A stretch of DNA of 64,000 bases from Octopus vulgaris (lineage: Eukaryota), in assembly GCA_951406725.2 (NCBI GenBank), contig OX597838.1:11718001-11782000 (forward strand). Reading direction: 5' to 3'. Positions 7,136-56,220 of this stretch are shown here, piece after piece (positions within the stretch are counted from its first letter, which is position 1; every line of letters starts with the position of its first letter). The translations under genes and the position numbers were made by a program. The notes under the pieces are model-generated. The model searched no databases. It saw only the letters and a list, made by a program, of their open reading frames with translations, and had not been told where the DNA came from.

Positions 7136-7272
7136 CTGCAGTTTCCATTGATTTTGATATTGGTGTACTTGACTCAATGGATCTCCTCAAGCACAGGGTC
7201 GAAACAGTGTTTCTTCACTTGCCACCTGCACATTCACAAGGAATATATTTCAGATGTGTTGTTATTTTTCAG

Positions 7273-7504
7273 GGATGGAGCACTTTGTATGTACAACAAC
7301 AAGACAGATAGTAAACCTTCAGCTTTCATCAACATGGGCATTGAGGACTGTACTGGATGTCGACGAGCCACTGACAGCGACAGAGAGAACACCATAGAGA
7401 TTATGTTGACCAACGGTGATTACTGGTACATTGCTGCTGCTACACCACTGGAGGCCAATGAGTGGCAACAGAGCTTCTGTCAGGCTGCCTCCGAAGTCAT
7501 GCAG
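7273..7504 (+). CDS. PLEKHM2: PLEKHM2/SKIP coding exon (PH domain)
   Basis: tttttcag|GGATGG...ATGCAG|gtgagt; FINMGIEDCTGCRRATDSDRENTIEI...EANEWQQSFCQAAS resembles SKIP SVNMGGEQCGGCRRANTTDRPHAFQV...EMAEWMQHLCQAVS; 232 nt. Confidence 0.95.
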
Positions 7505-7889
7505 GTGAGTGAATGGGGAGTAGAATTGGGGTACTACGGAAGCTGATGAGACATTAGTGGCAAACTGGTAATACCACACACTTGGAGGTTTAGTAGTGAT
7601 AGGTGACACTTCTTAGAGGTCGGTTGAAACATTTGACTCTGCTCTGTTGCAGTGTCTTCTTAATCCAAATTTTAAAACAAATCTTCATGGCTTAATTAGT
7701 GGATGAAGGATAACAGCCATGCTAATATTTGCAAGACCTCTAAGACAGATGGGTGGGTTGGAAAAAGGAATGAAGAAACCTTGTCTATGGGTTATAGTTG
7801 AAAGTTGGACATGAAGCTATGGAGTTGTTTAGACTTGAACTGGAGACCCAGTTTACATGTTTGTAACAGAGTGGACTACAGGCACCCAA

Positions 7890-21303: not shown

Positions 21304-23269
21304 TATCAAATTATATTTGTCTCTCACTGGATGGAATACATTTTTGTTGATCCCACCAATAATGGAAATTATATTTACATAGATATACATACATATTTCA
21401 TCATCATTTTAATGTCCACTTTTCCATGCATGCATAGGTTAGACAGAATTTTTGTTTTGGGACGTTTTCTATTGCTGGATGCCTTTCCTGCCACCAACTC
21501 TCACTTGTTACACCTGTTACAAATTGAGGTAATGTATGTATGTATGTATGTATGTATGTATGTATGTATGTATGTATGTATGCATGCATGCATGCATGCA
21601 TGCATGCATGTATGTATGTATGTATGTATGTATGTATGTATGTATGTATGTATGTATGTATGTATGTATGTATGTATGCATGCATGCATGCATGTATGTC
21701 TACGTATTTATATACACATATATATAAATTATGCATATATATGTGTGTATGTATGCATGTATATATATGTATATATATGCATATGTATATATATATATAT
21801 ATATATATTACAAAATGCTTTTTATTCTGAAATAATTTTTTTGCTTTGGAAAAAAGGAAAAAAAAAATCTCAAAACTGATTAAAATGATGTCTGAGGTCA
21901 GGTATTAATATTTGAAAGTACCATTGATTCTTTGGTGCCACCCCCCTCTCTGAAAACAAGAACCCTAAAACAACAAAAGACTATCCATATATACTCTGAT
22001 CCACTGATACCCTGATCCATTGGTAATCTGGTCTCCTCTCACCACACTTGATGGAGCTGCTCATGATGGTGACTATATCAGCCAATTACAGGTGTGCTAA
22101 TTGTCTCTGTCTGTGTGTCCATATTTCCAGCTGCATCTTCTTCTACAAGCCTATGATATAGGCCAGCCTGGTTCAATATTATCTCCCTCCAATAAACCCA
22201 TAAATACATACCTACCTGTGAACCGAACCACCCAACACGTCCTTCTTATACCCAGGAATGCTCCATCCTTATTTCTGTACTCTTTCAATAGCTCATAAAT
22301 TTTTATTTTTGAGTTCTTTCTGTTGTTTTGGTGAGTGGGTCTGGGTTTGTCCCTTCCTCTCTTACCCTTGCCATCCTTCTCTTCTTCCTCTCTTACCCTT
22401 GCCATCCTCCTCTTCCTCCTCCTCTTCCTCCTCCCTTACTACTACCACCCTACTTTGTCGTACAAGTGTCCTCATGGTCGTGTTTTAACTTTACTAGATA
22501 GCAGTGATGGATGAATTAATGCCGCTCTTTCATTTAATCCTAATCAAGCCATTGCTTGCTGTGTTAATAAACATAATTATAATAAAGATGATGATGATGA
22601 TGACGATGATTATATCTTGTAAATAAATACTCTCAAATTTGTACTGTGTTCCATTTGTATTTCTTTGTAAATATATATTCATTTGTCTGTATTTATGGGT
22701 TAGTTTAAAATAAAAGATATTCCGCCACTCCACATGTTGGAGCGGAATTCAAGATACAACCGCGTTTCAGGCGAAGTTACGATTTAAGGACTTGAAGACA
22801 GAATGTGTGCATCATTCAGTCAGAACCAAGAATCACTCGACAGCGACTATTTGACAATACACACAATAGCCAATTCCTAAGCATGACAGAATGTGTGAAT
22901 CATTCTCAGCTGTCAGAACAAAGCGTCAACACAATACCTCAAATGATAATAGAACGCTATTTTTTGCCAATTGAACGTCGAATGAAGTATGAGCCATTTG
23001 AAGAACTTTCACTAACATTGTTGCAATTAACTGCAATTAATTGATATGATAGCAGTCTATATAATTGGCTGTACGACTCCAATTAACTGGACCAATATAT
23101 TGCAATTAATTTTTCGTCAATTAATATTTTACAACCCCTGATGCCTGCAGCTAGAGGCAAAGTTGACACCGGTAGAATATGAACTCGAAACGCCAAAGGA
23201 TGTAAGTGAATGCTACAATATATTTTGCGTGCTGCCCCAACAATTCTGCTACTTTCATTATATATTTCT

Positions 23270-23400
23270 TTATTGCCCACAAGGGGCTAAACATAGAGGG
23301 GACAAACAAGGACACAGACAAAGGGATAAAGTCGATTACATCGGCCCCAGTGCGTAACTGGTACTTAATTTATCGACCCCGAGAGGATGAAAGGCAAAGT
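23270..23400 (-). mobile_element. SINE family B, 5'-truncated
   Basis: Reverse complement of the 3' half of 23416-23652. Confidence 0.8.
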
Positions 23401-23415
23401 CTATTAGCTGTTTGG

Positions 23416-23652
23416 TAAGGCGGCGAGCTGGCAGAAAAGTTAGCACGCCGGGTGAAATGCTTAGCAGTATTTCGTCTGCCGCTACGTTCTGAGTTCAAAT
23501 TCCGCCAAGGTCGACTTTGCCTTTCATCCTTTCGGGGTCGATTAAATAAGTACTAGTTACGCACTGGGGTCGATGTAATCGACTTAATACCTTTGTCTGT
23601 CCTTGTTTGTCCCCTCTATGTTTAGCCCCTTGTGGGTAATAAAGAAATATAC
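23416..23652 (+). mobile_element. SINE family B, full length with 13-bp TSD
   Basis: AAGGCGGCGAGCTGGCAG...AATAAAGAAATA; TSD ATTAGCTGTTTGG at 23403-23415 and 23653-23665. Confidence 0.9.
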
Positions 23653-29430: not shown

Positions 29431-29822
29431 ACATATAACAATATTGACCAAGGTTACCGTGGTCTTTTTCGTAGGCTTTTCTTCCCACGGATAAACCTTA
29501 CTTGCTTTCCCCTTTACACCATACATCATAACACTGTGATACACGATCCCTATTGATCGTTTTTTTTCCTCTTCCCCTTTTTCCTCTTTTTTCTTCTTTT
29601 TTCATTTTTCTTTTCTTTTGTTACTTTTCCTTTTTTCTTTTTTTCTTTTCTTTTCTTTTTGTTCTTTTTTTCCCTTTTACGATCCCTTTTGATCGAAAAC
29701 CTACGCCACCTTTTTTTGTTTCTTTTGTTTTTTGTTTTTTGTTTTTTTCATCCCCCCAAAGAAAAGCTCTACCCTGTAACTTGTCCCATCTGTGTGCAGC
29801 CCTGTGTGGCCAATAAAGAAAC

Positions 29823-34504: not shown

Positions 34505-35263
34505 CGAGCTGGCAGAAACGTTATCACGCCGGGCGAAATGCTTAGTGGTATTTTCGTCTGCCGTTACGTTCTGAGTTCAAATTCCGCCGAGGTAGACTTT
34601 GCCTTTCATCCTTTCGGGGTCGATAAATAAAGTACCAGTTACGCACTGGGGTCGATGTAATCGACTTAATCCGTGTGTCTGTCCTTGTTTGGGTAGTAAA
34701 GAAATAGGTATTTCGTCTGCCGTTACGTTCTGAGTTCAAATTCCGCGGAGGTCGACTTTGCCTTTCATCCTTTCGGGGTCGATAAATAAAGTACCAGTTG
34801 CGCACTGGGGTCGATGTAATCGACTTAATCCGTTTGTCTGTCCTTGTTTGTCCCTTCTATTTTTAACTCCTTGTGAGCAATAAAGAAATAGGTATTTCGT
34901 CTGTCTTTATGTTCTGAGTTCAAATTCCGCCGAGGTCGACTTTGCCTTTCATCCTTTCGGGGTCGATAAATAAAGTACCAGTTGCGCACTGGCTGGGGTC
35001 GATGTAATCGACTTAATCCCTTTGTCTGTTCTTGTTTGTCCCCTCTATTTTTAACCCCTTGTGGGCAATAAAGAAACAGGTATTTCGTCTGCCGTTACGT
35101 TCTGAGTTCAAATTCCGCGGAGGTCGACTTTGCCTTTCATCCTTTCGGGGTCGATAAATTAAGTACCAGTTGCGCACTGGGGTCGATGTAATCGACTTAA
35201 TCCGTTTGTCTGTCCTTGTTTGTCCCTTCTATTTTTAACTCCTTGTGAGCAATAAAGAAATAG
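34505..35263 (+). mobile_element. Tandem array of SINE family B: one headed copy plus three headless copies
   Basis: Units restart at GTATTTCGTC at 34708, 34892 and 35080, each directly after AAGAAA(T/C)AG. Confidence 0.9.
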
Positions 35264-35589
35264 GTAGTGGTGATGGTGACGTTTGTGATGCTGATGGTGA
35301 TGATGGTGATGGTGATGGAGATGGAGTGGTAGTGAGAGGTGGTGATGGCGTTGGGGATGGTGGTGATGGTGATGGTGATGAAGGTGATGGTGGTGGTGAT
35401 GGTGATGATAGTGATGGTGATGCTGGTGATGAAGGTAATGGTTGTTGTGATGGTGATGATGTGTGTGAGTGTGTGTGTGTGTAAATATGAGTCGGGATGG
35501 GGGAAGAGAATTCTGGTGGTGGTGGTGGTGGTGGTGTTGATAATGATATAAGACCGCGTGTGTGCATATGCGTGTATATGTGCACGTAT

Positions 35590-35783
35590 GTATGTGTGTG
35601 TTTGTGTTTATGTCTTTGCTGTGTGTTTGTATGTACGTATGTATGTATGTATGTATGTATGTATGTATGTATGTATGTATGTATGTATGTATGTATGTAT
35701 GTATGTATGTATGTATGTATGTATGTATGTGTGTGTGTATGTATGTTTGTATGTATGTATGTGTGTGTGTATGTATGTATGTA

Positions 35784-35816
<33 letters not shown>

Positions 35817-35885
35817 ATGTATGTATGTATGTATGTATGTATGTGTGTATGTATGCATGTATGTATGTATGTATGTATGTATGTA

Positions 35886-35918
<33 letters not shown>

Positions 35919-35923
35919 ATGTA

Positions 35924-35958
<35 letters not shown>

Positions 35959-36015
35959 ATGTATGTATGTATGTATGTATGTATGTATGCATGTATGTAT
36001 GTATGTATGTATGTA

Positions 36016-36046
<31 letters not shown>

Positions 36047-36091
36047 ATGTATGTATGTATGTATGTATGTGTGTGTGTATGTATGTATGTA

Positions 36092-36122
<31 letters not shown>

Positions 36123-36265
36123 ATGTATGTATGTATGTATGTATGTGTGTGTATGTGTGTGTGTATGTATGTATGTATGTATGTATGTATGTATGTATGT
36201 ATGTATGTATGTATGTATGTATGTATGTATGTATGTATGTATGTGTGTGTGTATGTATGTATGTA

Positions 36266-36298
<33 letters not shown>

Positions 36299-36387
36299 AT
36301 GTATGTATGCATGTGTGTATGTATGTATGTATGTATGTATGTATGTATGTATGTATGCATGCATGCATGCATGTATGTATGTATGTA

Positions 36388-36424
<37 letters not shown>

Positions 36425-38099
36425 ATGTATGTATGTATGTATGTATGTATGTATGTATGTATGTATGTATGTATGTATGTATGTATGTATGTATGTATGT
36501 ATGTATGTATGTATGTATGCATGTATGTATTATGTATGTATGTATGCATGTATGTATGTATGTATGTATGTATGTATGCATGTATGTATGTATGTATGTA
36601 TGTATGTATGTATGTATGTATGTATGTATGTATGTATGTATGTATGTATGTATGTATGTATGTATGTATGTATGTATGTATATATGTATGCATGTATGTA
36701 TGTATGTATGCATGTATGTATGTATATGCATGTATGTATGTATGTATGTATGTATGTATGCATGTACGTATGTATGTATGTATGTATATATGTATGCATG
36801 TATGTATGTATGTATGTATATATGTATGCATGTGTGTATGTATGTATGTTTGTATGTATGTATGTATGTATGTATGTATGTATGTATGCATATACGTATG
36901 TATGTATGTATGTATATATGTATGCATGTATGTATGTATGTATGTATATATGTATGTATGTATGTATGTGTGTGTGTATGTTTGTATGTATGTATGTATG
37001 TATGTATATATGTATGCATCTATGTATGTATGTATGTATGTATGTATGTATGTATGTATGTATGTATGTATGTATGTATGTATGTATGTATGTATGTATG
37101 TATGTATGTATGTATGTATGTATGTATGTATGTATGTATGTATGTATGTATGTATGTATGTATGTATGTATGTATGTATGTATGTTTGTATGTATGTTTG
37201 TATGTATGTATGTATGTATGTATGTATGTATGTATGTATGTGTGTATGTATGTATGTATGTGTGTGTGTATGTATGTATGTATGTATGTATGTATGTATG
37301 TATGTATGTATGTATGTGTGTATGTATGTATGTATGTATGTATGTATGTATGTATGTATGTATGTATGTGTGTGTGTATGTATGTTTGTATGTATGTTTG
37401 TATGTATGTATGTATGTATGTATGTATGTATGTATGTGTGTGTGTATGTATGTATGTATGTATGTATGTATGTATGTATGTATGTATGTATGTATGTATG
37501 TATGTATGTATGTATGTATGTATGTATGTATGTATGTATGTATGTATGTATGTATGTATGTATGTATGTATGTATGTATGTATGTTTGTATGTATGTATG
37601 TATGTATGTATGTATGTATGTATGTATGTATGAATGTATGTATGTATGTATGTATGTATGTATGTGTGTATGTATGTATGTATGTATGTATGTATGTATG
37701 TGTGTGTGTATGTATGTATGTATGTATGTATGTATGTATGTATGTATGTATGTATGTATGTATGTATGTATGTATGTATGTATGTGTGTATGTATGTATG
37801 TATGTATGTATGTATGTATGTATGTATGTATGTATGTATGTATGTATGTATGTATGTATGTATGTATGTATGTATGTATGTATGTATGTATGTATGATGT
37901 ATGTATGTATGTATGTATGTATGTATGTATGTATGTATGTATGTATGTATGTATGTATGTATGTATGTATGAATGTATGTATGTATGAATGTATGTATGA
38001 ATGTATGTATGTATGTATGTATGTATGTATGTATGTATGTATGTATGTATGTATGTATGTATGTATGTATGTATGTATGTATGTATGAATGTATGTATG

Positions 38100-38130
<31 letters not shown>

Positions 38131-38208
38131 TGTATGTATGTATGTATGTATGTATGTATGTATGTATGTATGTATGTATGTATGTATGAATGTATGTATG
38201 TATGTGTG
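35590..38208. repeat. About 2.6-kb (TATG)n microsatellite with TG and CATG interruptions
   Basis: Direct reading; gives the spurious 400-860 aa MYVC/HTYI ORFs. Confidence 0.97.
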
Positions 38209-38489
38209 TGCGTGTTTGTAGTGATAAATGTCGGGTGGAGGGAAGACGGAGGGAAAAGATGTTGGTTTGGAATCAAAACAAAGGCACGGAACGTTAAATT
38301 ATGGGCGAAGTTACGAGCTGAAGGAAAGTTTGTGAGTGGAAGGGTGGGGGTAGGGGTGGGGGGATGGAAACGAGGAAAGAATAAGGAAGGAAAAAAACTG
38401 TTTAGGGAAGGAAAGTGAATGAGGAAATAGGAAAAATTATATGAAAACATTGAGGTTGTTTGTATTAGATTATTGTAGTTGTAGGAGGA

Positions 38490-46664: not shown

Positions 46665-47090
46665 TTATTTCTTATTTCTTTATTACCCACAAGGGGCCAA
46701 ACATAGAGGGGACAAACAAGGGGACAAACGAAGGGATTAAGTCGATTATATCGACCCCAGTGCATAACTGGTACTTAATTTATCGACCCTGAAAAGGATG
46801 AAAGGCAAAGTCGACCTCGGTGGAATTTGAACTCAGAACATAAAAACAGACGAAATACCTATTTCTTTATTACCCACAAGGGGCTAAACACAGAGGGGAC
46901 AAACAAGGGGACAGACAAAGGGATTAAGTCGATTATATCGACCCCAGTGCGTAACTGGTACTTAATTTTATCGACCCCGAAAGGATGAAAGGCAAAGTCG
47001 ACCTCGGCGGAATTTGAACTCAGGACGTAACGGCAGACGAAATACGGCTACGCATTTCGCCCGGCGTGCTAACGTTTCAACCAGCTCCTT
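46665..47090 (-). mobile_element. SINE family B tandem dimer (headed plus headless copy)
   Basis: Same junction AAGAAATAG|GTATTTCGTC as in the 34.5-35.3 kb array. Confidence 0.88.
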
Positions 47091-52625: not shown

Positions 52626-53045
52626 ATGACAGATCCATCGGATTTTCAAAGAGGTCAAATTGTTGGTGCTCGTACAGTAGGTATTAGCGTAATGAAAACA
52701 ACCGAAGCGCTTGGTGTATCAAGAAATACTGTGCATCAAGAAGTACTTGAGAAAGAGGGAAAAACCTTCTCGTCGAAACAAAACTCGGGAAGAAAACCAA
52801 AACTTTCAGATAGGGACTGTCGGACTCTTACGCGAATTGTTGGAAAGAATCACAAAACTACATCTCCCAAAATTACTGCAGAGCTTAATGACCATCTTGA
52901 GAACCCAGTTTCCACAAAAACTACTCGTCGGGAGCCGCAAAAGCCGGATTTCACGGAAGGTCTGCAATCAGAAAACCACAACTTTCAAAAACATACGTTG
53001 CAAAGCATTTACAGTGGAGTGAAAACCTACAGAATACAATGTCTT
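52626..53045 (+). mobile_element. Tc1-like transposase N-terminal (DNA-binding) pseudogene fragment
   Basis: SDFQRGQIVGAR..G.SV.KT.E.LGVSR.TV...NSGRKPKLSDRD.RTL.RIV.KNHKTT..KITAELNDHLENPVSTKT, then frameshifted AGFHGRSAIRKP; no DDE domain present. Confidence 0.88.
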
Positions 53046-53240
53046 TCACAATAAATACACAGCGTGTTGAAACGAGGAAAGCAAGCGAATAGAATTTTTT
53101 AAAATTCGTTATTCCCTAATCGGACTGATTTCTGGATTAATCCACAAGGATTCTTCCTTCTTCAGCGAGAAACACGATAAGAATAAATGGAACACTTACA
53201 TAGGCGCAGGAGTAGCTGTGTGGTAAGTAGCTTCTTACCA

Positions 53241-55437
53241 GACAGACGTGTTGTTTTTTGCTCCTGCAAATGTCACGTGTTTGAACGTGAAATGTTGAAC
53301 TTTTGACTCGGTGACAGGTAAGACGTTCTGTATTTTTAGAAGCATAGTGAAGTTTATTGCTTGCTTAATGTTATTTAGCAGTTAACGTTATCTAGCATTA
53401 ATATTTTTTTGCGGGTAATAGACTTCACTTTACTTCAGATATATTTCTCTGCCTGTTGTCGTGTCTAAGGTCTCACTCTTTAGTGAGAATTGTGCTTTTT
53501 GAGGAGGCGTAGCCCCTCCGCAAAAATTAATTTGTTTGCTTGTGTTTTACTACTTCGCAAGAAAATTATAAAAATAAGCCACTATTGGATTACCCTTCGG
53601 ACCCATTTTTGTGGAGGTTGTGTTGCAGTTGCGGCATTCCAGGTTCAACCCAGGCCGGGAGTACCGCAAGGCCAGAATATTTTTGCTGTGTTTTTTCTGT
53701 TTATTAACTTTCTTTTGAACTTCATTTAAACCCCCCCCTTTTGTTTTTTTCTTTATTGCGACTTTCCGTTAATTTCTTCCCTTCTGTTGTGCTTTCTCCT
53801 TTTTGTTTTTTCAAAAATCTATCAAATTTTATTTAGACTTTTGAACTTTTTTCTTCCTGCTCTTGAGTTTAATTTGAATATATTTTTAAAAAAACATGGC
53901 AATGAAAAATAACAAAATTTTGGAGTGGGAAATCATACCACCCAAAAAGTGGTTAAAAGACCGTGAAGATAGGACGGTGGTGTTGAGAACCTACTCCAAG
54001 GCACTTGACACCATCGCCCTATTCGAAAAGACGGCAATTGAGGAGGAGTTGGAAGAGTATTTGCCAACAATTAAATTCATTTCAGGGGTGTCAAATATGC
54101 AACGGTGTGGTTGCTATTTGACACCCCTGAAGAGGCTTGCATATTTGCTAGCAAACCCTTGGAGGGTAAGGAAATCTTATTCCTGCCCACGTACAAAAAA
54201 AAGAAATTGATGAAAGCTTGGATCTGCGGACTGCCACCCGACATAGAACCCGAGTGGATAGAGGAGACTATCCGCCGGGGTCTGGGTGACAGCGAAACTA
54301 AGCTCCTCAATGTAAAAGTTCTTCCTGCGGCTGCTTGGGTTGGGTCGAAAGCAATTTTGACTCTGTGGACACAATCAGCCAATCTGGTTCTTCCAGATTT
54401 TTTGAAAATGGCCGGGTGCAGGTACCCGGTGATGCTTGAGGGTCGCCCCCCTAAGTGTCATCGGTGCTTGGAGTCCGGCCACATAAAGAAGAACTGTCCT
54501 CGGGAACAAAATAGGATCCCGGAACAGTTAAGTAAAACCCCTCTAGAAGAGGGAACGATAACGGCCGAGAAAGCAGAGGACTCCTCAAACAGAGGCCGAA
54601 AGAGGAAGGTGAGCAACAATGGGTGCTCACCAAAGGATAATAGGGATGAGGAGAGGAAGGCGAATCTTCCAGCCACGGAGGAGACGCACCCTCCCTCAGT
54701 TGAAAAGGGAAAAAAAAAGAAAAAGAGGAAGAAAAACGGGACATTACCGGCTGTCAGTGTAGCACCGGAATGTCGCGGAACTACGTCGGTTGGGGTTGTG
54801 CCACCGACAAGAGAAGGAATACCGTTGGCGGAAACTGTGCCGCCAACGAAAGAACTAAATGTGTTGGTCCTCTTCTATAGAGGAGGAGAAATTGAAAAAG
54901 TGATGGAAGAGCACTACAAGGGAGCACCTTTAGCCTTCACACAGGACCCCGAATGGCCTCCGCAGGTAGCTGTGGAGGCCGTGGCGTTCGACGTGACGCT
55001 AGGGCTAAAGGAGCTCATCGAAGATTATAACTTGGTCCCGGGCGACGCGAACTCGGAACTTGACTACGTTCTGAGGGAGGCGTGGTTGATGGTGGAGGGC
55101 GCGGGCACAAGCTATTTCGAGGACGATATGTATTATTAGTAATGGACTTAAGTCCAAAAATTGAAAAATTGTAAGAGGATTAATACCTCGTTTTGTATTA
55201 ATAATGGACTGCTAAGCCCAAAAATTGGGAAAAATTGTAAGAGGTTTTATACCTCGTTTTGTGTTTATCTTTTTAAAAAGAACAATGTTTTAGAGAAGCA
55301 AAAGTCGGCGGGCGCTTTCTGTCTTCTCCCATCCTTATCATCTTTCTTTCATTATCATTCACTTCATTAATGTCCTCGTCCAGCCCGCAAAGCTAACTTA
55401 ATCTGTGTACTGCCTTTATGGCAAATGTTTTGAAATA
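53241..55437 (+). mobile_element. ORF1-only non-LTR-like element (half-LINE/HAL1-like, Tx1/L1-type ORF1)
   Basis: About 650-nt 5'UTR, single ORF1-like CDS, about 300-nt 3'UTR ending AATAAA, imperfect about 17-bp target duplication; no RT or endonuclease ORF. Confidence 0.7.
53896..55139 (+). CDS. Gag-like/ORF1p nucleic-acid-binding protein with one CCHC zinc knuckle; one frameshift near 54075-54090 (about 414 aa if repaired)
   Basis: AAACATGG start; RRM-like segments (TVVLRTY, WLLFDTPEEA, AWICGLPPDI); C-x2-C-x4-H-x4-C CHRCLESGHIKKNC at 54456-54497; basic KKKKKRKK; ORFs 53896..54210 and 54105..55139 overlap in different frames. Confidence 0.75.
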
Positions 55438-55586
55438 AAGTAGCTTGCTAACCAACCACATGGTTCCGGGTTCAGTCCCACTGCGTGGCATCTTGGGCAA
55501 GTGTCTTCTGCTATAGCCCCGGGTCGACCAATGCCTTGTGAGTGGATTTGGTAGACGGAAACTGAAAGAAGCCTGTCGTATATATG

Positions 55587-55619
<33 letters not shown>

Positions 55620-56220
55620 TTGTGTGTCTGTGTTTGTCCCCCTAGCATTGCTTGACAACCGATGCTGGTGTGTTTACGGCCCCGTTACTTAGCGGTTCGG
55701 CAAAAGAGACCGATAGAATAAGTACTGGGCTTACAAAGAATAAGTCCCGGGGTCGATTTGCTCGACTAAAGGCGGTGCTCCAGCATGGCCGCAGTCAAAT
55801 GACTGAAACAAGTAAAAGAGTAAAAAAGAGAGTAAAGAGTATACCCACTGAAAGAACAGCTGCAAAGTCATGTGTACATTTAAGTACCCCGAATATATCT
55901 AAACAGAAATTGTGTAGCAAGCCTCAGCACACGTGTAGACGGTCTGGAAAACTCACGTAAAGTGCTTACTAGTCCCGAAGTGAATGGTAATAAGTTTACT
56001 TCTAATGTAAGAATAACATTTTTTCAAGCAAAATTTTATCAATGGCCAGCATATTAAAATATCTTTCTAAGTGAAAATTAGAAACAATTATAAATAAGAG
56101 CAAAAGAGGCTTCCTATAGAATTTCTGTTTAGATATATTTGGGGTACTTAAATGTACTCATGTCTTTGCATCTGCTTTTTCCGTGGGTGTATATAAGTGT
56201 TCCATTTATTCTAATTGTGT

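What the first reader, a model, noticed from the sequence alone, without database searches (positions are those of the whole stretch)
53241..55437. ORF1-only (half-LINE-like) retroelement encoding a zinc-knuckle protein, sitting inside a SINE head
Seen: a 2.2-kb non-microsatellite island with 5'UTR, one gag/ORF1-like CDS (RRM-like segments, one CX2CX4HX4C knuckle, basic NLS-like run) and a 3'UTR ending AATAAA. It has no RT or endonuclease, and SINE A sequence continues on both sides. Known: L1/Tx1 ORF1 proteins have RRM plus CCHC knuckles, and vertebrate HAL1 elements encode only ORF1 and move in trans. Inference: a cephalopod HAL1-like non-autonomous family. It keeps both its apparent 5' end and a polyA-signal 3' end, so it does not look like a 5'-truncated LINE. 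I am not aware of such a family being described in octopus, but could not search.
Basis: partly seen in the sequence, partly recalled or inferred. Interest (0 to 1): 0.8.

Follow-up and report, generated by a model that had tools for sequence, protein, structure and literature searches.

The report
ORF1-only LINE derivative inside octopus SINE
This 2.2-kb insert is a dead copy of a retrotransposon that kept only the RNA-binding "ORF1" gene of an octopus LINE and lost the reverse-transcriptase gene, so it must have been copied by another element's enzyme. This is a known kind of genomic parasite (like mammalian HAL1), not yet described in cephalopods in the papers I could search.

Summary
Window 53241-55437 is a single-copy 2.2-kb unit with a 655-nt leader. 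It has one 415-codon ORF broken by one frameshift, encoding two RRM-like domains, one CCHC knuckle and a basic run. A ~300-nt trailer ends in AATAAA(G) with no poly(A). It interrupts a young SINE-A copy and is flanked by a 14-17-bp target-site duplication.

The ORF is a remote but significant homologue of ORF1 proteins that sit directly upstream of APE+RT+zf-RVT ORF2s in five LINE loci. Four are octopod (O. vulgaris, O. sinensis, Argonauta hians and one unidentified sequencing run); one is a marine-metagenome contig. No such ORF2 exists anywhere in the 64 kb.

The last ~40 nt align to the conserved 3' tail of those LINEs. A second SINE family in the window carries the same tail, so the element holds the handle for trans-mobilisation.

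The "family" claim is only partly shown. I found one close relative (O. sinensis LOC115225585; dN/dS 0.21, dS ~1), and it is 3'-truncated. That relative joins the SINE-A head at the same nucleotide. Both copies keep a very stable 23-bp hairpin inside the ORF. Two other octopus loci (59% identical) are also ORF2-less.

Verdict: a real, HAL1-like ORF1-only LINE derivative. Interest is moderate.

The parts
53191..53240 (+). Head (5' about 50 nt) of the host SINE-A copy, left flank of the insertion
   Evidence: Aligns in register with the heads of 8 other SINE-A copies in the window. It differs from the window consensus at 3 of about 42 positions.
53224..53240 (+). Left copy of the target-site duplication (14-17 nt; 2 differences from the right copy)
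   Evidence: The left flank ends 17 nt further into the SINE than the right flank begins. The joined flanks give a normal SINE-A, 90% identical to consensus.
53241..53895 (+). 5' leader (655 nt, T-rich). It starts (A)GACAGACGTGTTG, like the 5' ends of full-length relatives
   Evidence: It is homologous to, but much more diverged from, the leader of the O. sinensis copy (A2). The 5' ends of LINEs L004 (GACGTTAC) and L002 (GGACGTGTCTCC) share the GACGT start. A T6 run 13 nt into the leader would stop Pol III.
53896..54081 (+). ORF1 piece A (frame 1): N-terminus and first half of RRM-like domain 1
   Evidence: 67% identical to residues 1-63 of O. sinensis P0001. The AF2 model of P0001 has pLDDT 87-97 here.
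54079..54084 (+). Single frameshift that breaks the ORF (one-base length difference from the O. sinensis copy, which reads straight through)
   Evidence: The frames were worked out by hand and confirmed.
54081..54131 (+). Very stable hairpin inside the coding sequence: 17-bp perfect stem, an inner 5 bp, and a 6-nt loop
   Evidence: the repeat finder pair I2, 100% complementary. RNA MFE is -38.2 kcal/mol, z=-7.7. The O. sinensis copy gives -34.9, z=-6.8. There are only 2 differences in the 47-nt core despite 73% overall CDS identity, and neither change disrupts pairing. The hairpin is absent at the same place in 5 other ORF1 families.
54084..55139 (+). ORF1 piece B (frame 2) with stop codon: rest of RRM-like 1, RRM-like 2, knuckle, basic linker, C-terminal region
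   Evidence: 61% identical to P0001 over 212 aa. Direct tblastn hit from a bona fide LINE ORF1 (L004), E=3e-9. The AF2 model has pLDDT 85-95 for residues 1-140.
54456..54497 (+). CCHC zinc knuckle, CX2CX4HX4C
   Evidence: Pfam zf-CCHC E=0.006. The cysteines are among the most conserved columns of the 30-sequence alignment: one invariant and two at >=90%. The family profile hits retroviral nucleocapsid knuckles in the PDB, E about 2e-6.
54705..54740 (+). Basic run KGKKKKKRKKNG within a low-complexity linker
   Evidence: Read from the translation. The region is disordered in the model. Relatives have comparable basic linkers.
54840..55136 (+). C-terminal region; probably the counterpart of the C-terminal domain of LINE ORF1s (..FPxDVG.. 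module)
   Evidence: Motif-level resemblance only. hhalign gives E=0.065, not significant. The model has low confidence here.
55134..55268 (+). Two tandem copies of a 62-66-bp unit spanning the stop codon and the start of the 3'UTR
   Evidence: Self-BLAST 86%; the repeat finder families D2, D4 and D5.
55140..55440 (+). 3'UTR (about 300 nt), about the same length as the 3'UTR of the full-length LINE L004 (274 nt)
   Evidence: Positions 55310-55365 align weakly to a 3'UTR module shared by the two other ORF2-less loci L003 and L014.
55401..55440 (+). LINE-type 3' tail ATCTGTGTACTGCCTTTATGGCA..AAATAAAG with a small hairpin (TGCC/GGCA, 55411-55423)
   Evidence: Aligns to the tails of LINEs L004, L002 and L013, the L001 LINE fragment, the solo unit L003, and SINE-B copies (A6). 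The tail motif occurs 7 times in the window against 0.02 expected. The hairpin sits at the same place with six different complementary stems.
55438..55454 (+). Right copy of the target-site duplication (matches the SINE-A consensus exactly)
55438..55860 (+). Remainder of the host SINE-A copy, right flank
   Evidence: 94% identical to the copy at 834-1245.

Best explanation
Window 53241-55437 is a dead, retrotransposed copy of an ORF2-less ('half-LINE') derivative of an octopod LINE superfamily of the L1/Tx1 type.

Shown here. The single ORF encodes a type-I ORF1 protein: two RRM-like domains, one CCHC knuckle, a basic linker and a C-terminal region. The unit has no endonuclease or reverse transcriptase. 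Its last ~40 nt are the conserved 3' tail (small stem-loop plus AATAAAG) that ends the autonomous LINEs of this superfamily. That tail has also been borrowed by an abundant second SINE in the same window. The unit was inserted into a young SINE-A copy with a 14-17-bp target-site duplication.

Inferred. Pol II transcribes the unit from its leader, and ORF1p coats its own RNA. The ORF2 protein of a related autonomous LINE recognises the 3' tail and copies the RNA into a nicked target by target-primed reverse transcription, priming on the AAG shared by tail and target. This particular copy later acquired one frameshift.

The ORF had been under purifying selection for a long time before insertion. 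It probably belongs to a lineage that persists without its own RT.
For: - ORF1 homology: the profile search returns 60 hits at E<=1e-3, and every hit that carries a source name is octopod. In five loci the homologous ORF1 is followed directly by an ORF2. These are L004 (O. vulgaris; Pfam Exo_endo_phos + RVT_1 + zf-RVT), L002 (O. sinensis), L005 (unidentified run), L013 (Argonauta) and L012 (marine metagenome).
- L004 ORF2 matches human L1 ORF2p at E=2e-71 over residues 3-868.
- Fold: the AF2 model of the intact O. sinensis homologue has pLDDT 81. Its top Foldseek hits are tandem-RRM proteins (NONO/SFPQ, hnRNP A1 UP1), E 7e-6 to 1e-4.
- No ORF2 is found in the 64 kb.
- Tail: alignment A6; motif 7 times against 0.02 expected; hairpin with six different complementary stems.
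- Target-site duplication and host SINE.
- Selection: dN/dS is 0.21 with dS about 1.04 against the O. sinensis copy over 273 codons.
- ORF2-less precedent: L003 and L014 are colinear at 59% identity over 1.9 kb, lack ORF2, and have pN 0.27 against pS 0.74.
- Literature: type-I ORF1p = RRM + CCHC, typical of Tx1-like elements (PMC5203782). HAL1 = an L1 derivative that encodes only ORF1p (PMC5753468).
Against: - Only two members of this lineage were found. The second is truncated inside the ORF, so an ORF2-less architecture is documented for this lineage once.
- No autonomous partner sharing more than the terminal ~40 nt was found.
- Similarity of the 5' ends and of the C-terminal domain to LINE relatives is at motif level only (hhalign E=0.065).
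- Transcription, ORF1p function and trans-mobilisation are all inferred.
- The protein databases hold no further close relatives, even among short fragments. That argues for low copy number.
Confidence: 0.7

Rival explanations
1. One-off deletion derivative. The lineage's master copies are ordinary full-length LINEs (ORF1 + ORF2). This copy lost ORF2 by an internal deletion or template switch during or after its own retrotransposition. There is then no self-perpetuating ORF1-only family.
For: - Only one ORF2-less copy of this lineage is documented. The O. sinensis relative is uninformative because it is truncated.
- A tandem duplication sits exactly at the stop codon/3'UTR junction, which could be a scar of rearrangement.
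- Purifying selection on ORF1 is also expected for full-length LINEs.
Against: - The unit looks clean: a full leader, a complete ORF1 with its own stop, and a 3'UTR of normal length (298 vs 274 nt) with an intact tail.
- A different octopus ORF1 lineage shows an ORF2-less architecture shared by two copies only 59% identical. ORF2-less lineages therefore do persist here.
- The window's 3'UTR resembles a module of those ORF2-less loci that is not found in four LINE 3'UTRs. That resemblance is weak.
Confidence: 0.2
2. Host gene rather than transposon: a domesticated ORF1-derived gene (as L1TD1 is in mammals). The window copy would be a processed pseudogene or duplicate of it.
For: - dN/dS is 0.21 across an old split.
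- The O. sinensis relative is annotated as a gene, LOC115225585.
- The lineage is a long, isolated branch among octopod ORF1s.
- Copy number appears very low.
Against: - Both known copies are broken. The window copy has a frameshift. The O. sinensis copy is truncated and its first knuckle cysteine is replaced.
- The unit ends at the LINE/SINE tail with no poly(A) and within 0-3 nt of AATAAA. A processed mRNA copy would not end this way.
- It sits inside a SINE with a target-site duplication.
Confidence: 0.07
3. This rival concerns the SINE association only. The SINE-A head would be part of the element: captured once at its 5' end, or added by template switching onto SINE RNA. It would not be flanking target, so the shared junction in two species would be inheritance and not site preference.
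For: - Both copies carry the head, joined at the same nucleotide.
- Both element-linked heads read CTT(A)CC where the window's SINE-A consensus reads CTAACC.
- In the L003/L014 lineage, the conserved upstream 100 bp turned out to be part of the unit.
Against: - In the window the SINE continues seamlessly after the element, with a 17-nt overlap. A captured head does not explain this unless the nick also fell at that SINE position.
- Each head matches the window's SINE-A consensus at about 88-93% of positions, counted by eye. This is far better than expected for sequence that co-evolved with an element whose copies differ at dS about 1. The head is only about 41 nt, so the test is weak.
Confidence: 0.25

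Closest known systems
HAL1 (half-L1) of mammals
   Same: A non-autonomous LINE derivative that keeps a leader, an ORF1 under selection and a LINE 3' end. It has lost ORF2 and depends on a partner's ORF2p (PMC5753468, citing Smit 1999 and Bao & Jurka 2010).
   Different: - HAL1 carries the type-II ORF1 (coiled coil-RRM-CTD, Transposase_22) and a poly(A) tail recognised by L1.
- This unit has a type-I ORF1 (2 RRM-like domains + CCHC) and a specific stem-loop/AATAAAG tail without poly(A).
- HAL1 is documented as multi-copy families; here there are two copies.
HeT-A of Drosophila telomeres (from my own knowledge, not checked here)
   Same: A non-LTR element that encodes only a Gag/ORF1-like protein with CCHC knuckles and relies on the RT of another element.
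   Different: HeT-A belongs to the Jockey clade, is telomere-specific, forms arrays and is co-opted for telomere maintenance. None of this is indicated here.
Tx1-group LINEs (Tx1L and relatives) within the L1 clade
   Same: - The relatives' ORF2 has APE + RT + zf-RVT and is L1-like.
- ORF1 has RRM + CCHC, the type-I form described as consistent with the Tx1 clade (PMC5203782).
- The Tx group is known for target-specific insertion, including into other repeats (PMC3747384). Here one relative sits in (ATT)n, others form head-to-tail arrays, and the two copies of this lineage join a SINE at one nucleotide.
   Different: - Clade membership was not tested by an RT phylogeny against reference elements.
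- This unit itself has no ORF2.
SINEs with LINE-derived tails (stringent-type SINE/LINE pairs)
   Same: Trans-mobilisation through a shared specific 3' tail. SINE-B in this window carries the same tail as the LINEs and as this unit.
   Different: A SINE is short, Pol III-driven and non-coding. This unit is 2.2 kb, has a T6 run right after its start that would stop Pol III, and encodes a protein.
L1TD1 (domesticated L1 ORF1 gene of mammals)
   Same: An ORF1-derived protein kept under selection without ORF2 (PMC4161310, title and abstract).
   Different: L1TD1 is a single syntenic host gene. This copy is broken, flanked by a target-site duplication and nested in a SINE.

Membership tests
Type-I LINE ORF1 protein (Khazina & Weichenrieder classes, as summarised in PMC5203782) | At least one RRM-fold domain | tested here: met
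   The AF2 model of the intact O. sinensis homologue has two beta-alpha-beta domains at pLDDT 83-97. Its Foldseek top hits are tandem-RRM proteins, E 7e-6 to 1e-4. The window's own piece B alone gives only weak ferredoxin-like/RRM hits, E>=0.019.
Type-I LINE ORF1 protein | CCHC zinc knuckle after the RRM(s) | tested here: met
   CX2CX4HX4C at 54456-54497. Pfam E=0.006, below the cut-off. The cysteines are among the most conserved alignment columns. The profile hits nucleocapsid knuckles in the PDB.
Type-I LINE ORF1 protein | Homologues are encoded as the first ORF of APE+RT LINEs | tested here: met
   L004, L002, L005, L013 and L012 all show ORF1 followed by ORF2.
Half-LINE / HAL1-like non-autonomous element | Encodes ORF1 only; no EN or RT | tested here: met
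   tblastn of LINE ORF2 against the window finds nothing. About 300 nt separate the ORF1 stop from the element's end.
Half-LINE / HAL1-like non-autonomous element | Keeps the partner LINE's 3' recognition end | tested here: met
   Tail alignment A6 and the conserved hairpin. The same tail is on SINE-B. Homology is limited to about 40 nt.
Half-LINE / HAL1-like non-autonomous element | Inserted by target-primed reverse transcription (target-site duplication) | tested here: met
   14-17-nt overlap of the two SINE-A flanks.
Half-LINE / HAL1-like non-autonomous element | Many copies share the ORF2-less structure and both ends (amplified as such) | tested here: inconclusive
   One close relative exists, and it is 3'-truncated. 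There are no further close proteins or fragments. The metagenome scans were empty. No cephalopod assembly is searchable by DNA here.
HAL1 proper (mammalian L1-derived) | Type-II ORF1 (Transposase_22) and poly(A) tail | tested here: not met
   There is no Transposase_22 hit and no poly(A). The unit works like HAL1 but is not a member of it.
Autonomous L1/Tx1-type LINE | ORF2 with APE endonuclease, RT and zf-RVT | tested here: not met
   Absent from the unit and from the window. Present in relatives.
Target-specific (Tx1-like) retroelement | Independent copies at the same position of the same target sequence | tested here: inconclusive
   Two of two copies join the SINE-A head at the same nucleotide and in the same orientation. 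The host SINE is young (94% to another copy), while the copies differ at dS about 1. N=2, and the 3' side of the second copy is lost.
Processed pseudogene of a host mRNA | Poly(A) tail 10-30 nt after the AATAAA; no transposon termini | tested here: not met
   The unit ends at AATAAA(G) with the LINE/SINE tail.

The most novel reading that the evidence does not exclude
Octopods would harbour ancient, self-perpetuating lineages of ORF1-only retroelements that have lived for a long time (dS >= 1) on the reverse transcriptase of Tx1/L1-like LINEs. The lineage seen here would insert specifically at one nucleotide of the tRNA-like head of the most abundant octopus SINE, a parasite targeted to a parasite, as Tx1L is to Tx1D. 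It would also carry a selected 23-bp RNA hairpin inside its ORF as a cis-acting signal for localisation, packaging or RT recruitment, or as an ADAR or Dicer substrate.
Probability: 0.3. Interest if true: 0.7.

Novelty: new member of a known kind. Interest (0 to 1): 0.45.

Why it matters
- Half-LINEs are well documented essentially only in mammals (HAL1), and by analogy in Drosophila (HeT-A). An ORF1-only derivative of a type-I-ORF1, specific-tail LINE in a cephalopod shows that the strategy has arisen in a very different LINE lineage.
- It gives a natural system for asking what ORF1p contributes when the RT comes in trans.
- The work also identifies the LINE superfamily whose 3' tail is carried by one of the abundant octopus SINEs. 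That is useful for annotating cephalopod genomes, where LINE activity in the brain is being studied (PMC9115989 reports only RTE and Dong elements).
- If the shared insertion point in the SINE-A head reflects real target choice, it would be a new example of nested target specificity.
- The conserved coding-region hairpin is a concrete, testable candidate cis-element in a genome famous for RNA editing.

Tried and rejected
1. Pfam on both ORF pieces gave only a sub-threshold zf-CCHC hit and no RRM or Transposase_22. The RRM assignment needed structure prediction.
2. Word-indexed protein searches with the C-terminal 130 aa and with the RRM2-knuckle piece, meant to catch short fragments of further copies, found nothing.
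3. A metagenome scan with the conserved hairpin as probe, and a peptide-pattern scan with alignment A1, found nothing.
4. Rfam on the unit gave only microsatellite noise in the flanking SINE. ARAGORN finds no tRNA in the window.
5. I first read an 11-bp repeat (TGCTGGGTTCG) around the ORF2-less locus L003 as its target-site duplication. I withdrew this after L014 showed that homology runs about 100 bp upstream of it. L003's boundaries are uncertain.
6. Homology of the window's C-terminal region to the C-terminal domain of LINE ORF1s rests on motif resemblance only: hhalign E=0.065 and a low-confidence model.
7. A programmed -1 frameshift at the hairpin was considered and rejected. No slippery heptamer precedes it, and the O. 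sinensis copy is in frame.
8. Mobilisation of SINE head + element as one Pol III transcript was rejected. The insert separates the A and B boxes by 2.2 kb and starts with a T6 run.
9. Orthology or segmental duplication of the window and O. sinensis loci was rejected. There is no flank similarity, and the host SINE is far younger than the split of the two copies.
10. The ORF1 tree could not place the lineage: it is a long branch on an unresolved node.
Full report
**What is there.**

Window 53241-55437 (+) occurs once in the 64 kb.
- It has a 655-nt T-rich leader.
- An ORF starts at ATG 53896. It reads in one frame to about 54081 and continues, after a single frameshift between 54079 and 54084, in a second frame to the stop at 55137-55139. 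I kept the two pieces apart in every search.
- The translation contains an exact CX2CX4HX4C knuckle at 54456-54497. Pfam zf-CCHC gives E=0.006, below the curated cut-off.
- It also has a basic run, KGKKKKKRKKNG, and about 100 further residues.
- The ~300-nt trailer begins with two tandem 62-66-bp units (55134-55268). It ends ...GAAATAAA with no poly(A).

**The flanks.**

The 50 nt to the left and the 423 nt to the right are one copy of the abundant tRNA-derived SINE ("SINE-A").
- In register with eight other copies, the left flank ends 17 nt further into the SINE than the right flank begins.
- This is a 14-17-nt target-site duplication (53224-53240 and 55438-55454, 2 differences). Its exact length is blurred by an AAG shared between the element's end and the target.
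- Joining the flanks restores an ordinary SINE-A, 90% identical to the window consensus and 94% to the best other copy.
- The unit was therefore inserted, by a mechanism that duplicates the target, into a fairly young SINE.

**What the protein is.**

A word-indexed search found one close relative: O. sinensis LOC115225585 (P0001, 281 aa, 61% identity). P0001 reads straight through the window's frameshift site. It has lost the first knuckle cysteine and is truncated.

A profile of the two sequences, run against 1.8 billion representatives, found 60 proteins at E<=1e-3. They match the N-terminal ~200 residues plus the knuckle. Every hit that carries a source name is octopod: O. sinensis, O. vulgaris, O. 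bimaculoides and Argonauta hians.

Fetching the loci showed what these proteins are.
- In O. vulgaris L004 the homologue is the first ORF of a 5.3-kb LINE present as a head-to-tail array. An overlapping 1132-aa ORF2 follows it, with Exo_endo_phos, RVT_1 and zf-RVT. That ORF2 matches human L1 ORF2p at E=2e-71 over residues 3-868.
- The same ORF1-then-ORF2 layout is seen in O. sinensis L002, in a Logan contig of an unidentified run (L005), in Argonauta L013 and in a Tara Oceans contig L012.
- The L004 ORF1 hits the window directly by tblastn at 54084-54497, E=3e-9. The L004 ORF2 hits nothing in the window.

An AlphaFold model of P0001, built with the 38-sequence alignment, has mean pLDDT 81 (83-97 over residues 10-200). 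It shows two beta-alpha-beta domains. Its best PDB matches are tandem-RRM proteins, E 7e-6 to 1e-4. The window's piece B models confidently only for RRM-like domain 2 and the knuckle.

Two RRM-like domains plus a CCHC knuckle define the "type I" ORF1p. That type is described as characteristic of Tx1-like members of the L1 group (PMC5203782).

**The ends.**

The pattern CCTTGTG-N(3-14)-AATAAA occurs seven times in the window against 0.02 expected.
- All seven are the 3' ends of a second SINE family ("SINE-B"). One example is 23420-23648, with a 13-bp target-site duplication. There are also tandem arrays at 34700-35260 and 46680-47050.
- The SINE-B tail GTCCCCTCTATGTTTAGCCCCTTGTGGGTAATAAAGAAATA is the 3' end of the LINEs L004, L002 and L013. 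It also ends a LINE fragment in L001 and the ORF2-less unit L003.
- The window unit's last 40 nt (ATCTGTGTACTGCCTTTATGGCA...AAATAAAG) align to this tail (A6).
- At the same place every tail can form a 3-4-bp hairpin, usually with a 5-nt loop. The stems differ but stay complementary: CCC/GGG, CTC/GAG, GCC/GGC, AGGC/GCCT, GATT/AATC, and here TGCC/GGCA.
- So the unit carries the structure that this LINE superfamily's RT evidently uses, since a SINE has borrowed it.
- AATAAAG is part of that tail and need not be a working poly(A) signal.

At the 5' end the unit starts (A)GACAGACGTG. The full-length LINEs start GACGTTAC (L004) and GGACGTGTC (L002). This is suggestive of a complete 5' end but is no more than a motif.

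**Is it a family?**

- The window and O. sinensis copies are 73% identical over the shared 870 nt, and their leaders are barely alignable. dN/dS is 0.21 with dS about 1.04 over 273 codons. The two copies therefore come from lineages that separated long ago and were selected for the protein all along.
- The window copy has no in-frame stop and one frameshift, and it sits in a SINE only about 6% diverged from its closest relative. It is therefore much younger than that split.
- The O. sinensis copy breaks off in the C-terminal region (about L001 10960). No ORF2 lies within 10 kb downstream. It cannot tell us whether its lineage had an ORF2.
- No more close relatives exist in the protein collections, even among short fragments. 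No cephalopod genome could be searched by DNA.
- Indirect support comes from a different ORF1 lineage. O. vulgaris loci L003 and L014 are colinear from leader through ORF1 into a shared 3'UTR module over 1.9 kb at 59% identity. They lack ORF2 and show pN 0.27 against a saturated pS of 0.74. In that lineage the loss of ORF2 predates an old split.
- The window's 3'UTR resembles the L003/L014 module weakly. The module was not found in four LINE 3'UTRs.

**Two unexpected features.**

(a) The O. sinensis copy is also preceded by a SINE-A head, in the same orientation, joined to the element at the same nucleotide. The window reads ...GTAAGTAGCTT-CTTACCA|GACAG. L001 reads ...GTAAGTAGCTTGCTT-CC|TGTGC.
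- Sequence upstream of the two heads is unrelated.
- The window's host SINE is far younger than the split of the two copies, so one ancestral insertion later copied as DNA does not fit.
- Three readings remain. The first is a real target preference: strict specificity, or a favoured nick site in a very abundant repeat. The second is a head that travels with the element, with homology-assisted joining. The third is gene conversion between SINE copies.
- Relatives hint at non-random integration. L002 lies in (ATT)n on both sides, and L004, L012 and SINE-B form head-to-tail arrays. Tx-group LINEs are known for target specificity (PMC3747384).
- With two copies, this stays a lead.

(b) Inside the ORF, at the foot of which the frameshift lies, is a perfect 17-nt inverted repeat plus five inner pairs and a 6-nt loop (54081-54131).
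- As RNA it folds at -38.2 kcal/mol, z=-7.7. The O. sinensis copy has the same hairpin at -34.9, z=-6.8.
- Its 47-nt core differs at 2 positions, against 27% elsewhere in the CDS. One change turns A-U into G.U, and the other lies in the single-base bulge.
- Five other ORF1 families have nothing comparable at the homologous RGxxYGTVxVxF segment.
- I have no tested explanation. A cis-acting RNA signal is the natural guess.

**Comparison with known elements.**

- Functionally the unit matches the half-LINE concept (HAL1; PMC5753468) and, from memory, Drosophila HeT-A.
- It is not HAL1 itself: it has a different ORF1 type and no poly(A).
- It is not an autonomous LINE, and it is not a processed pseudogene.
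- The library search for octopus + LINE + ORF1 + retrotransposon returned nothing describing such an element. The main octopus LINE paper reports RTE and Dong elements.

**Verdict.**

This is a new member of a known kind, with two side observations that deserve a genome-wide follow-up.

Noticed in passing
window 23420-23648 (+), 23269-23400 (-), 34700-35260 (+), 46680-47050 (-): A second SINE family ('SINE-B', about 230 nt, B-box-like GTTCTGAGTTCAAATTCC). Its 3' tail (..GTCCCCTCTATGTTTAGCCCCTTGTGGGTAATAAAGAAATA) is the 3' end of the octopod L1/Tx1-like LINEs L004, L002 and L013. This identifies its partner LINE superfamily. One copy has a 13-bp target-site duplication, ATTAGCTGTTTGG. Other copies form head-to-tail arrays of 5'-truncated ~185-bp units.
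   Followed up: partly
window 54081-54131; L001 10189-10236: A 23-bp hairpin inside the ORF1 coding sequence, conserved between two copies that are otherwise only 73% identical (z -7.7 and -6.8). It is absent from five other ORF1 families. Its function is unknown.
   Followed up: partly
L001 9450-9490 versus window 53198-53240: The O. sinensis relative is joined to a SINE-A head at the same nucleotide and in the same orientation as the window copy, although the flanks upstream of the heads are unrelated.
   Followed up: partly
L004 2440-14300 (O. vulgaris OX597840.1): At least three head-to-tail copies (period about 5285 bp) of a full-length LINE. The first copy has intact ORF1 (503 aa) and ORF2 (1132 aa). 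The 3' end ..AAAACACTGATAAG abuts the next copy's 5' end GACGTTAC directly.
   Followed up: partly
L002 7720-7780 and 13345-13380 (O. sinensis CM016872.1): A LINE of the same superfamily (ORF1 615 aa, decayed ORF2) is flanked on both sides by (ATT)n. This suggests insertion into a TAA-type microsatellite.
   Followed up: no
L003 7818-9652 and L014 5828-7706 (O. vulgaris): Two ORF2-less ORF1 loci of another lineage, 59% identical over 1.9 kb. They share a 3'UTR module that is 89% identical over 56 nt, more conserved than their CDS. L014 is flanked by an ~80-bp direct repeat. L003's 3' flank repeats about 30 nt of its own leader.
   Followed up: partly
window 29768-29822: An orphan LINE/SINE-type tail (..CATCTGTGTGCAGCCCTGTGTGGCCAATAAAGAAAC) after a T-rich stretch and directly before a (CTAT)n microsatellite. 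It is the tail most similar to that of the ORF1-only unit.
   Followed up: no
window 52626-53054 (+): N-terminal fragment of a Tc1/mariner-type transposase (HTH_23 and HTH_Tnp_Tc3_2, both weak hits), about 140 bp upstream of the host SINE.
   Followed up: partly
window about 7250-7546 (+): The C-terminal part of an ORF matches a PH domain (Pfam PF00169, E=3.5e-5, just under the cut-off). It may be an exon of a host gene.
   Followed up: no
window 35159-38450: More than 3 kb of TACA/TATG-type microsatellite. It gives spurious ORFs of up to 863 aa on both strands. Much of the rest of the window is also microsatellite and SINE-A (10 or more SINE-A copies or fragments).
   Followed up: no
L012 (Tara Oceans marine metagenome contig, 6159 bp): An unidentified marine eukaryote carries tandem LINEs with an 861-aa ORF1 of the same superfamily (RRM-like x2, CCHC, C-terminal ..LYRALKVTFPTDVGG..) and an APE-RT ORF2 35% identical to the octopus one. 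The ORF1 type is therefore not confined to cephalopods.
   Followed up: partly
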